In this document: piece by piece, positions 22,865 through 24,011 of the stretch
How positions within the stretch are numbered: the first letter of the stretch is position 1
Layout: each line of letters opens with the position of its first letter
Assembly: GCF_001194135.2 (NCBI RefSeq)
Contig: NC_068987.1
Coordinates: forward strand, 74,274,926 to 74,307,409
Direction: 5' to 3'
DNA: 32,484 nt
DNA from: Octopus bimaculoides
Taxonomy: Eukaryota
Translations under genes and position numbers: made by a program
The notes under the pieces: model-generated
Told to the model about the DNA's origin: nothing
Database searches by the model: none
Seen by the model: the letters and a program-made list of their open reading frames with translations, nothing else

Positions 22865-24011
22865 CATTGGTTCTCAAAATCTTTTTTTTTTTTTCATCTA
22901 TGGATTACTATTTGATTACTATGGACCCTGTAGCCATTCAATGTTTAGAAACTAGTTTTATAGATTCGTCTTTCAAAATTCCTATTTTGCTTTTCACACA
23001 TTCACTTATGTTGATCTGCAAGAGAGAACATGTTCCAATGGCTGGAAACAAAGTAAACTACTAGCTGACCCCGTACCGTCAAAAGTGACGGCTAATTGTA
23101 ATATTTTATATATATAAATATGGATGGTAAATCAAATTAATACACTTGTCAATATTATCTAGTGGTTGTCTTTTGAGGTGTGACATCGATCATCGTTTGT
23201 TACTGAAAGAACGCTGGTTCACCCATACAAACATACACATACCTCCCTTGTACATGCACACATATACACACATATACTCACACATAATTGAAACGCTGTT
23301 TGATTTTTCTTTTCAGCGTTGAATGTTCACCATCCCACTTCCATTGCGCGCGCGCGCACACACATACACATTCACATAGATGTATTATGTAAAAAATATA
23401 CACTACAGCAATAATAAATTTTCTTATACTAATATTAAGCTAGACGTACCAACAATTTCAATTTTAAATATCGTGAACGAACATAAATCAACCAATCTTC
23501 CTTACTCTCATGACATATAGACAATGACTTACACAGTCATTCTTAATGCGTTTCTTTTTTTCTCAGCAGATTCAGACGTAAATATATTGAACGCTGTTGT
23601 ATTCCGTCACTGGAGAACATCTTTCAGGCAAATGTGCGTTCATAGCACACTCGATTTTTGGTAATTTCTGGTGGGGAGGTTTTACATACACACGCATATA
23701 CCCACACAGATTTGAAACGCTCCCACTACCAGTTTACCATCACCCCATCCTTCCTTATTCTTCTATCACCCCTTACTTTCTCATTCATATGTTGTGACGG
23801 AGAAAAACACAAGAGTATTATTATAGTAGATGAAAAACATTAGAGAAAGAAACGTAACTCTTTCTTGCAAAAAATACATCTGAAACAAAATTTTTTCACT
23901 TACCTTCAAAATACCACCTTGGATCATCAATGTACTATTTTGCTCGAGTGGACCCCCAAAAATCTTATATGGATCTCCAGAGTCCATATAGATCCTTGTT
24001 GAAAACCACTG
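22865..24011. mobile_element. hAT-type MITE interrupted by a Helitron
   Basis: Left end cattggttctcaa and right end gttgaaaaccactg (revcomp cagtggttttcaac). Right flank atctagac fits the hAT nTCTAGAn preference, but the left flank accaaaat matches only 4/8. Confidence 0.55.
23061..23830 (-). mobile_element. Non-autonomous Helitron
   Basis: Minus strand reads A|TCtactataataat ... ccgtcacttttgacgg (16-nt hairpin, 23076-23091), 11 nt, CTAG|T. This gives 5'-TC, 3' hairpin, 3'-CTRR and an AT target with no TSD. Confidence 0.85.

What the first reader, a model, noticed from the sequence alone, without database searches (positions are those of the whole stretch)
23061..23830. Helitron carrying a 280-bp copy of nearby host DNA: apparent very recent local capture
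Seen: all canonical Helitron hallmarks on the minus strand (A|TC start, ccgtca-cttt-tgacgg hairpin 11 nt before CTAG|T). Inside, between CA-rich segments, 23377-23656 matches 19570-19849 with no differences by eye and no TSD; it is antisense to the Helitron and includes an exon-like unit. Established: Helitrons capture gene fragments (maize, bats), but donor and captured copy are rarely seen adjacent and identical. Inference: templated gap-repair capture from a neighbouring locus, which could seed exon shuffling if the element is mobilised.
Basis: partly seen in the sequence, partly recalled or inferred. Interest (0 to 1): 0.78.

Follow-up and report, generated by a model that had tools for sequence, protein, structure and literature searches.

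The report
Helitron-like element with local 280-bp copy
A 770-base stretch has the end signals of a small rolling-circle transposon (Helitron) and contains a perfect 280-base copy of DNA lying 3.5 kb away, but the transposon family, the claimed exon and even the reality of the copy could not be confirmed in this gap-filled draft assembly.

Summary
19570-19849 and 23377-23656 are identical over 280 nt with sharp edges. On the minus strand, 23061-23830 starts A|TCTACTA and ends with a CCGTCA-CTTT-TGACGG hairpin, 11 nt, then CTAG|T. It has no terminal inverted repeats and no target-site duplication.

The 3' signal alone is near chance level: 1 seen against 0.3 expected per window. Together with a canonical-looking 5' end within 1 kb, it occurs in only 0.7% of shuffled windows. 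A non-autonomous Helitron is therefore probable, at about 0.7.

The window is a short-read scaffold with nine N gaps. The two copies lie in different contigs with two gaps between them. Both the 100% identity and the adjacency could therefore come from the assembler.

The "exon-like unit" is only a splice-signal pattern. Seven other such units occur in the window, and no protein homologue was found.

If the copy is real, the best reading is a templated ("filler DNA") repair insertion beside a (GC)5(CA)n tract, with possible 2-3 nt junction microhomology. That is a known kind of event. Interest is modest until reads or long-read data confirm the copy.

The parts
23061..23830 (-). Putative non-autonomous Helitron, 770 nt. 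It has no Rep/helicase ORF, no terminal inverted repeats and no target-site duplication. Host A (23831) and T (23060) flank it.
23820..23830 (-). 5' terminus TCTACTATAAT, preceded by host A. It resembles the maize Helitron 5' ends TCTCTACTAC and TCTATACTAT.
   Evidence: ATCTACTA occurs only twice in the window.
23076..23091 (-). 16-nt palindrome CCGTCA-CTTT-TGACGG, the 3' subterminal hairpin. The fold extends it by one G.T pair. dG is -6.2 kcal/mol and z is -2.2.
23061..23075 (-). 11-nt spacer TACGGGGTCAG followed by the 3' terminus CTAG (23064-23061). The next base on this strand is T (23060).
23377..23656 (+). 280-nt copy inside the element, the presumed acceptor copy. The true insert may be 275 nt if its first 2 nt (TA) and last 3 nt (ATT) belong to the acceptor.
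19570..19849 (+). Identical 280-nt copy, the presumed donor. It lies in ordinary AT-rich unique DNA of another contig, 3.2 kb beyond the element's 3' end and in the same orientation.
   Evidence: GC is 31.8% for the copy, 32-35% for the donor flanks and 39-40% for the Helitron arms.
23345..23376 (.). (GC)5(CA)n-like alternating purine-pyrimidine tract that abuts the left junction of the insert.
23260..23297 (+). Internal repeat unit (CA-rich + ATTGAAACGCT), first copy, on the 3' side of the insert. It is 87% identical to 23684-23721.
   Evidence: Alignment score is 51 against a shuffle maximum of 30.
23684..23721 (+). Internal repeat unit, second copy, on the 5' side of the insert.
23654..23673 (+). 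Tandem 10-mer ATTTTTGGTA/ATTTCTGGTG. It begins in the last 3 nt of the 280-nt identity, which suggests a possible 3-nt microhomology at the right junction.
19760..19826 (+). 'Exon-like unit': a polypyrimidine tract and CAG, a 67-nt stretch with one open frame, then GTGCGT. It is repeated at 23567-23633. There is no evidence that it is an exon.

Best explanation
23061-23830 (minus strand) is most likely a short non-autonomous Helitron sitting between a host A and T in TE-rich, microsatellite-rich DNA of what looks like a cephalopod. Its interior is non-coding: two diverged copies of a CA-rich unit ending in (A)TTGAAACGCT.

Between these units, directly beside a (GC)5(CA)n tract, about 275-280 nt were copied from a site 3.2 kb beyond the element's 3' end, in the same orientation. 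The most likely mechanism is templated repair of a break or stalled fork at the alternating purine-pyrimidine tract. A broken end invaded nearby DNA through 2-3 nt of microhomology, copied about 280 nt and rejoined. This is the 'filler DNA' route that the literature uses to explain internal Helitron captures.

Shown: the termini, the identity, the position of the insert, and the absence of a target-site duplication. Inferred: family membership, the direction of copying (19570 to 23377), the repair mechanism and the age. Zero differences in 280 nt gives under about 1.1% divergence. With the octopus TE calibration of PMC13282606 that is under about 1.5 My, provided the identity is not assembler-made.

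The Helitron may simply be where the break happened. Nothing shows that the transposase was involved or that the chimeric element has transposed.
For: - Termini at canonical geometry: 5' TC, 3' CTAG, a 16-nt palindrome 11 nt upstream, A/T flanks, no terminal inverted repeats and no target-site duplication. These are the features listed in PMC6544945.
- The 5' TCTACTA resembles published Helitron 5' ends.
- Joint chance of such a 3' end with such a 5' end within 1 kb is 0.7% of shuffled windows.
- Helitrons make up 0.7-3.7% of octopus genomes, and 8 families were recently active in O. vulgaris.
- The 280-nt identity is exact and sharp-edged, with no flank similarity.
- The insert is internal, which excludes end-bypass capture and fits filler DNA.
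- The insert abuts a (GC)5(CA)n tract.
- Its first 2 nt and last 3 nt continue the acceptor's own local repeats, CACATA and ATTT(T/C)TGGT(A/G). This allows 2-3 nt of junction microhomology.
- The copy's GC content (31.8%) matches the flanks at 19570 (32-35%) better than the Helitron arms (39-40%).
Against: - No other member of the family was found in the window, in protein space, or in metagenome, prokaryote-genome and viral contig collections. None of these collections is expected to hold this genome, so the test is weak. Even so, membership remains unproven.
- The 3' signal alone is close to chance: 1 seen against 0.30 expected.
- The 5' motif used in the joint test was chosen after seeing the sequence.
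- The two copies lie in different contigs of a scaffold with nine gaps. Perfect identity and proximity are what an assembler artefact would also produce.
- The microhomologies are only 2-3 nt and rest on very short local repeats.
- No empty site was seen.
Confidence: 0.45

Rival explanations
1. Assembly artefact. Only one genomic copy of the 280 nt exists, or the second is not where it is shown. Either a gap closer filled a gap between two microsatellite-bounded contig ends with reads recruited through mate pairs from about 3.5-4 kb away, or a de Bruijn assembler placed one repeat contig twice. The Helitron-like ends may still be real, but there was no capture.
For: - The window is a short-read-style scaffold with nine N runs of estimated sizes, and contigs of about 0.7-5 kb.
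- The two copies lie in different contigs separated by two gaps.
- Identity is exactly 100% with knife-sharp edges.
- The acceptor copy sits between CA/GC microsatellite-like tracts. Contigs in this window typically break at such tracts: the gaps at 7575, 11140, 21913 and 28395 all abut microsatellites.
- The 3.8 kb spacing is in the range of common mate-pair inserts. This last point is established knowledge of such libraries, not tested here.
Against: - No N remains at either junction.
- The flanks share no sequence that would let an assembler join them by overlap. At least some chimeric-looking reads would therefore be needed.
- The microsatellite at the left junction is short (32 nt) and imperfect, well below read length.
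- The possible 2-3 nt microhomologies fit a biological junction.
Confidence: 0.3
2. The duplication is real but there is no Helitron. The 280 nt is a templated insertion, or small dispersed duplication, into ordinary microsatellite-rich non-coding DNA. It arose by microhomology-mediated break repair or replication template switching at the (GC)5(CA)n tract. The 'Helitron ends' 300 nt and 170 nt away are chance matches.
For: - The 3' hairpin + CTRR|T signal is expected 0.3 times per window by chance even with a GC-rich stem, and 5 times with any stem.
- 'A|TC' alone is uninformative.
- No second copy of the 770-nt element occurs in the window.
- The hairpin is modest, at -6.2 kcal/mol.
- The element has no coding capacity.
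- Break-prone alternating purine-pyrimidine tracts explain the insertion point without any transposon.
Against: - The joint occurrence of both canonical-looking ends on one strand within 1 kb is seen in 0.7% of shuffles.
- The spacing (11 nt), the palindrome length (16 nt) and the A/T flanks are all at the textbook values.
- If this is an octopus genome, roughly one Helitron-annotated copy is expected per 60 kb. That prior is far higher than the chance rate.
Confidence: 0.18
3. The direction is reversed. The 280 nt belongs to the Helitron family consensus, and the 19570 copy is the derived one, a fragment of the element copied into neighbouring DNA.
For: The direction cannot be read from identity alone. 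The heptamer CCGTCAC/GTGACGG of the 3' hairpin also occurs 31 nt from the element's 5' end and inside the 280 nt. That makes 3 of the window's 6 occurrences, against 1.5 expected for the whole window. This could hint that the 280 nt is native to the element.
Against: - The copy's base composition fits the 19570 flanks better than the Helitron arms.
- In the element it interrupts two related repeat units at a microsatellite.
- At 19570 it is seamless with complex unique DNA.
- An isolated internal 280-nt fragment at 19570 would still need the same templated-repair event.
Confidence: 0.04

Closest known systems
Canonical (Helitron1-type) non-autonomous Helitrons, such as maize Hel1-4 and HelA2 and the insect Hel1 family (PMC10095026, PMC6544945)
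   Same: - 5' TC, here TCTACTA compared with TCTCTACTAC and TCTATACTAT.
- 3' CTAG.
- A 16-nt palindrome 11 nt before the end.
- Host A and T flanks.
- No target-site duplication, no terminal inverted repeats and no coding capacity.
- A size of a few hundred bp.
   Different: No family is demonstrated, since no second copy is available. No empty site was seen. The hairpin is at the short, weak end of the range. The interior is made of CA-rich repeat units.
Stepwise internal sequence acquisition by Helitrons under the filler-DNA model, as in Spodoptera frugiperda Sfru_Hel1Aa/Ab/Ac (PMC6544945)
   Same: Host DNA sits inside the element between intact termini. A source locus is identifiable, and short end junctions are possible.
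   Different: - In S. frugiperda the source loci are on other scaffolds, the chimeric elements have amplified, and 2-13 bp junction homologies were shown against a shorter core element.
- Here the source lies 3.2 kb away in cis and the identity is 100%.
- Here no amplification is seen and no insert-free core is available, so the junction homology (2-3 nt) is only inferred.
Templated ('filler DNA') insertions at repaired double-strand breaks, and local replication template switching (Gorbunova and Levy 1997, cited in PMC6544945; MMBIR/FoSTeS-type events, from established knowledge)
   Same: A few hundred bp were copied from a nearby template. There is no target-site duplication, the edges are sharp, little or no microhomology is present, and the insertion lies beside a structure-forming repeat.
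   Different: Those events need no transposon. If that is all this is, the Helitron is incidental.
Duplicated segments created by short-read assemblers and gap closers
   Same: Perfect identity, a length of a few hundred bp, copies in separate contigs of one scaffold, and microsatellite-bounded edges.
   Different: No Ns remain at the junctions, and there is no flank overlap that would explain a false join.

Membership tests
Helitron (canonical, non-autonomous) | 5' terminus TC | tested here: met
   The minus strand starts TCTACTATAAT at 23830. TC alone carries almost no information. TCTACTA resembles published 5' ends, and ATCTACTA occurs twice in the window.
Helitron (canonical, non-autonomous) | 3' terminus CTRR | tested here: met
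   CTAG at 23064-23061 on the minus strand.
Helitron (canonical, non-autonomous) | 16-20 nt palindrome forming a hairpin about 10-12 nt upstream of the 3' end | tested here: met
   CCGTCA-CTTT-TGACGG is 16 nt long and lies 11 nt before CTAG. dG is -6.2 kcal/mol and z is -2.2. As a stand-alone signal it is expected 0.30 times per window.
Helitron (canonical, non-autonomous) | Insertion between host A and T, with no target-site duplication and no terminal inverted repeats | tested here: inconclusive
   The flanks are A (23831) and T (23060) on the minus strand. There is no flanking direct repeat and no terminal inverted repeat. No empty site, allelic or paralogous or orthologous, could be retrieved.
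Helitron (canonical, non-autonomous) | Multiple genomic copies sharing the terminal about 30 nt with unrelated flanks | not testable with these tools
   No second copy exists in the 32-kb window. No hits were found in the protein database or in metagenome, prokaryote or viral contigs. The host genome itself is not searchable here.
Helitron (canonical, non-autonomous) | An autonomous partner encoding Rep/helicase in the same genome | not testable with these tools
   None is present in the window. The literature reports Helitrons in octopus genomes, but the species of the window is not established.
Helitron gene or sequence capture by filler DNA | Foreign segment internal to the element, with both termini retained | tested here: met
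   The copy occupies 23377-23656, with 316 nt of element on the 3' side and 174 nt on the 5' side.
Helitron gene or sequence capture by filler DNA | Identifiable source locus | tested here: met
   19570-19849 matches 280/280. The direction of copying is inferred from composition and context only.
Helitron gene or sequence capture by filler DNA | Short homologies (2-13 bp) between the acceptor break ends and the source flanks | tested here: inconclusive
   No identity exists outside the 280 nt. The first 2 nt (TA) and last 3 nt (ATT) of the identity continue the acceptor's own local repeats. Without the insert-free element this cannot be settled.
Helitron gene or sequence capture by filler DNA | Insert-free relatives of the same family, or amplified chimeric copies | not testable with these tools
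   No other family member is available.
Captured exon / exon shuffling | The captured segment contains a real exon of a host gene | tested here: not met
   Only a splice-signal pattern is present, at 19760-19826. Nine acceptor-defined units of the same quality occur on the + strand and two on the - strand; four of the nine + strand ones belong to the two copies themselves. No protein homologue was found for any reading frame of at least 46 aa of the copy. None was found for any stop-free stretch of at least 55 aa in 15.8-25.1 kb. The unit's one open frame (28 aa) was too short to search. No Rfam family or tRNA matches. Transcript data were not available.

The most novel reading that the evidence does not exclude
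The element is a Helitron caught immediately after a filler-DNA capture, under about 1.5 My ago. The donor is still intact 3.2 kb downstream in cis, and both junctions are unmodified. That would be a natural before-and-after pair. It would show that Helitron capture templates are chosen by physical proximity, and that capture starts at a structure-forming microsatellite inside the element, in a lineage where Helitrons were recently active.
Probability: 0.35. Interest if true: 0.5.

Novelty: new member of a known kind. Interest (0 to 1): 0.3.

Why it matters
Helitron capture is documented mainly from old, amplified chimeras whose donors are elsewhere and have diverged, so the mechanism is still argued (end bypass versus filler DNA; PMC6544945). 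A verified case with an identical donor a few kb away would give clean junctions. It would also point to local, repair-driven acquisition at a fragile repeat.

As it stands, the case is one unamplified, non-coding 280-nt insert in a draft assembly. No exon is involved and no mobilisation is shown, so its practical weight is small until the copy is confirmed.

Tried and rejected
- **Second copy of the element in the window.** blastn with word size 7 on both arms and both flanks found only CA-microsatellite matches and the internal 38-nt repeat.
- **Independent assemblies of the locus via exact-protein look-up.** Four window ORFs were tried: one inside the copy, one spanning the Helitron 5' end, and two TE ORFs. 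None is on record.
- **Composite protein query of all ORFs across 22855-24134 plus the donor junction ORFs.** No hit.
- **Composite query of the TE ORFs, to identify the species and harvest same-species DNA.** It returned 431 LINE reverse transcriptases at 30-41% identity from insects, sponges and unnamed contigs. None is close, so no same-species loci could be fetched.
- **Composite query of all stop-free stretches of at least 55 aa in 15.8-25.1 kb, including SINE-derived ones.** No hit, so no host gene was found and no route to orthologous loci.
- **Exact 22-mer of the 3' end and 24-mer of the copy.** No matches in metagenome, prokaryote-genome or viral contigs.
- **Pfam scan of ten ORFs.** Only a weak RVT_1 hit in the LINE remnant.
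- **Rfam and tRNA scans of the window.** Nothing, so the 280 nt is not a known RNA gene.
- **Supplement of the O. vulgaris repeat paper.** It holds no consensus library.
- **Full-text search for the SINE sequence to fix the species.** No hit.
- **Rejected: the 280 nt as an ordinary transposable element copy.** It has only two copies, no target-site duplication, no terminal structure and 100% identity.
- **Rejected: end-bypass (read-through) capture.** The insert is internal and both original termini are kept.
- **Rejected: a diverged larger segmental duplication.** The flanks show no residual similarity.

Full report
**What is there**

The window is a draft eukaryotic scaffold. It has 32,484 nt, 36% G+C and nine N runs of 10-671 nt that separate contigs of about 0.7-5 kb. 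It is crowded with microsatellites, several copies of a SINE-like repeat with microsatellite tails, a LINE remnant and other short repeats. From memory, the SINE and microsatellite architecture looks like an octopus genome. I could not verify the species.

19570-19849 and 23377-23656 are identical over 280 nt. The bases just outside each edge match at random level. It is the only long exact repeat in the window.

On the minus strand, 23830 downwards reads A|TCTACTATAATAAT. The stretch ends ...GCCGTCA-CTTT-TGACGG-TACGGGGTCAG-CTAG|T at 23061. The hairpin folds at -6.2 kcal/mol, z = -2.2. There are no terminal inverted repeats and no flanking direct repeat.

**Is the Helitron signal more than chance?**

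On its own the 3' signal is weak. I defined it as a perfect 6-bp stem, 5-15 nt upstream of CTRR followed by T. It occurs 4 times in the window against 5.0 +/- 2.3 in dinucleotide shuffles. With at least 4 G/C in the stem it occurs once against 0.30 expected. 'A|TC' alone is uninformative.

The 5' end, however, reads TCTACTA. Published maize Helitron 5' ends are TCTCTACTAC and TCTATACTAT, with CTAG 3' ends (PMC10095026 Table 3). ATCTACTA occurs only twice in the window.

I then required a GC-rich-hairpin 3' end plus A|TC(TM)TACTA upstream on the same strand. This is seen in 0.7% of 1500 shuffled windows within 1 kb, and in 2.2% within 5 kb. The caveat is that I defined the 5' motif after seeing the sequence.

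Against that chance rate, Helitron-annotated copies number about 43,700 in O. bimaculoides (0.7% of the genome) and make up 3.7% of O. minor (PMC6279123). Eight Helitron families have recently active copies in O. vulgaris (PMC13282606). I therefore rate a genuine non-autonomous Helitron at about 0.7.

The defining family test needs other copies sharing the termini, and I could not run it. No second copy exists in the window. None of the searchable collections holds this genome.

**Anatomy of the element**

The interior is non-coding. It holds two diverged copies of a unit made of a CA-rich tract followed by (A)TTGAAACGCT. These lie at 23260-23297 and 23684-23721, are 87% identical, and score 51 against a shuffle maximum of 30.

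The 280-nt copy lies between these units, directly after a (GC)5(CA)n tract at 23345-23376. The first two bases of the identity (TA) complete the tract's recurring CACATA motif. The last three (ATT) begin a tandem 10-mer, ATTTTTGGTA/ATTTCTGGTG, at 23654-23673. The true insert may therefore be about 275 nt with 2-3 nt of microhomology at each junction.

The copy's G+C (31.8%) resembles the flanks at 19570 (32-35%) more than the Helitron arms (39-40%). This weakly favours copying from 19570 to 23377.

**How it most likely arose, if real**

The insert is internal and both termini are retained. That rules out end-bypass capture and matches the filler-DNA model, in which a break inside the element is repaired using ectopic template (PMC6544945). 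The break point beside an alternating purine-pyrimidine tract, and a template 3.2 kb away in the same orientation, fit local templated repair or replication template switching.

This mechanism needs no Helitron enzyme, so the element may simply be where the break occurred. Nothing indicates that the chimeric element has moved.

Zero differences in 280 nt bounds divergence at about 1.1%. With the calibration of JC 0.09 to about 25 My, that means under about 1.5 My. This is an inference, and it holds only if the identity is biological.

**The main rival**

The two copies lie in different contigs, 15848-20926 and 22222-25077, with two gaps between them. In such assemblies one repeat contig can be used twice, which makes any near-identical pair look 100% identical. 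Gap closers can also import reads recruited by mate pairs from a few kb away. The acceptor copy sits between microsatellite-like tracts, which is where contigs in this window usually break.

Against an artefact, no Ns remain at the junctions, the flanks share no overlap that would cause a false join, and the left tract is short. I put the artefact at about 0.3. Only reads or long reads can settle it.

**The 'exon-like unit'**

19760-19826 has a polypyrimidine tract and CAG, one open frame over 67 nt, and GTGCGT. By the same criteria there are eleven acceptor-defined units in the window. Four of them belong to the two copies themselves, which leaves seven others in 32 kb.

No protein homologue exists for any reading frame of at least 46 aa of the copy. 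None exists for any stop-free stretch of at least 55 aa in 15.8-25.1 kb. The unit's own open frame (28 aa) was too short to search. No RNA family matches. The exon-shuffling prospect is unsupported.

**Verdict**

An assembly artefact is a serious alternative.

If real, it is a new instance of a known phenomenon with an unusually close and identical donor. Interest is 0.3.

Noticed in passing
3716-3865, 7011-7152, 11632-11789, 20559-20689, 27389-27546, 29614-29814; head parts at 1612-1681, 11006-11075, 27643-27712, 29512-29581: A SINE-like family is present in at least six copies on both strands at 62-88% identity. Each copy runs into a microsatellite tail, and several N gaps abut these tails. 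ARAGORN and Rfam do not recognise a tRNA or other RNA head.
   Followed up: partly
about 8000-10270, + strand: A degenerate, frameshifted LINE remnant with a weak RVT_1 match. Its 431 reverse-transcriptase homologues are only 30-41% identical (insects, a sponge, unnamed contigs). No close relative of this genome's TEs is in the protein collection.
   Followed up: partly
23906-24030, minus strand (ORF 23781-24131): 76 nt upstream of the Helitron 5' end there is ...TTAACTGCAG|CTGACCACTGTCTAGATCAGTGGTTTTCAAC...TTGAAG|GTAAGTG. This is a perfect 5' splice-site consensus inside a 116-aa ORF with no homologue. It could be a real exon, which would place the Helitron in an intron, or the end of a DNA transposon. 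Unresolved.
   Followed up: partly
23085-23091(-), 23794-23800(-), 23604-23610(+), 19797-19803(+), 258-264, 14441-14447: The heptamer CCGTCAC, the 5' arm of the 3' hairpin, occurs 6 times in the window against 1.5 expected. Three occurrences lie inside the 770-nt element: the hairpin arm, 31 nt from the 5' end, and on the opposite strand inside the 280-nt copy. I have no explanation.
   Followed up: partly
25768-25906, 25963-26101, 4688-4826, 22224-22298: A second short repeat family: two tandemly spaced copies at 84% identity, one at 64%, and an inverted copy (88%) directly after the gap that ends at 22221.
   Followed up: no
14377-15150, + strand: A 258-aa open stretch. Motifs such as DLKSAYLQLHV in a neighbouring frame look like an LTR-retrotransposon reverse transcriptase, but Pfam gave no hit.
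   Followed up: partly
24775-24835 and 26577-26630: Two long perfect (TAT)n / (TTA)n microsatellites of about 20 units each, 1.8 kb apart.
   Followed up: no
22890-22900(+) and 23827-23837(-): The 11-mer TTTTTCATCTA, which spans the A|TC junction of the Helitron 5' end, also occurs on the + strand 160 nt beyond the element's 3' end. This is probably chance in AT-rich DNA.
   Followed up: no
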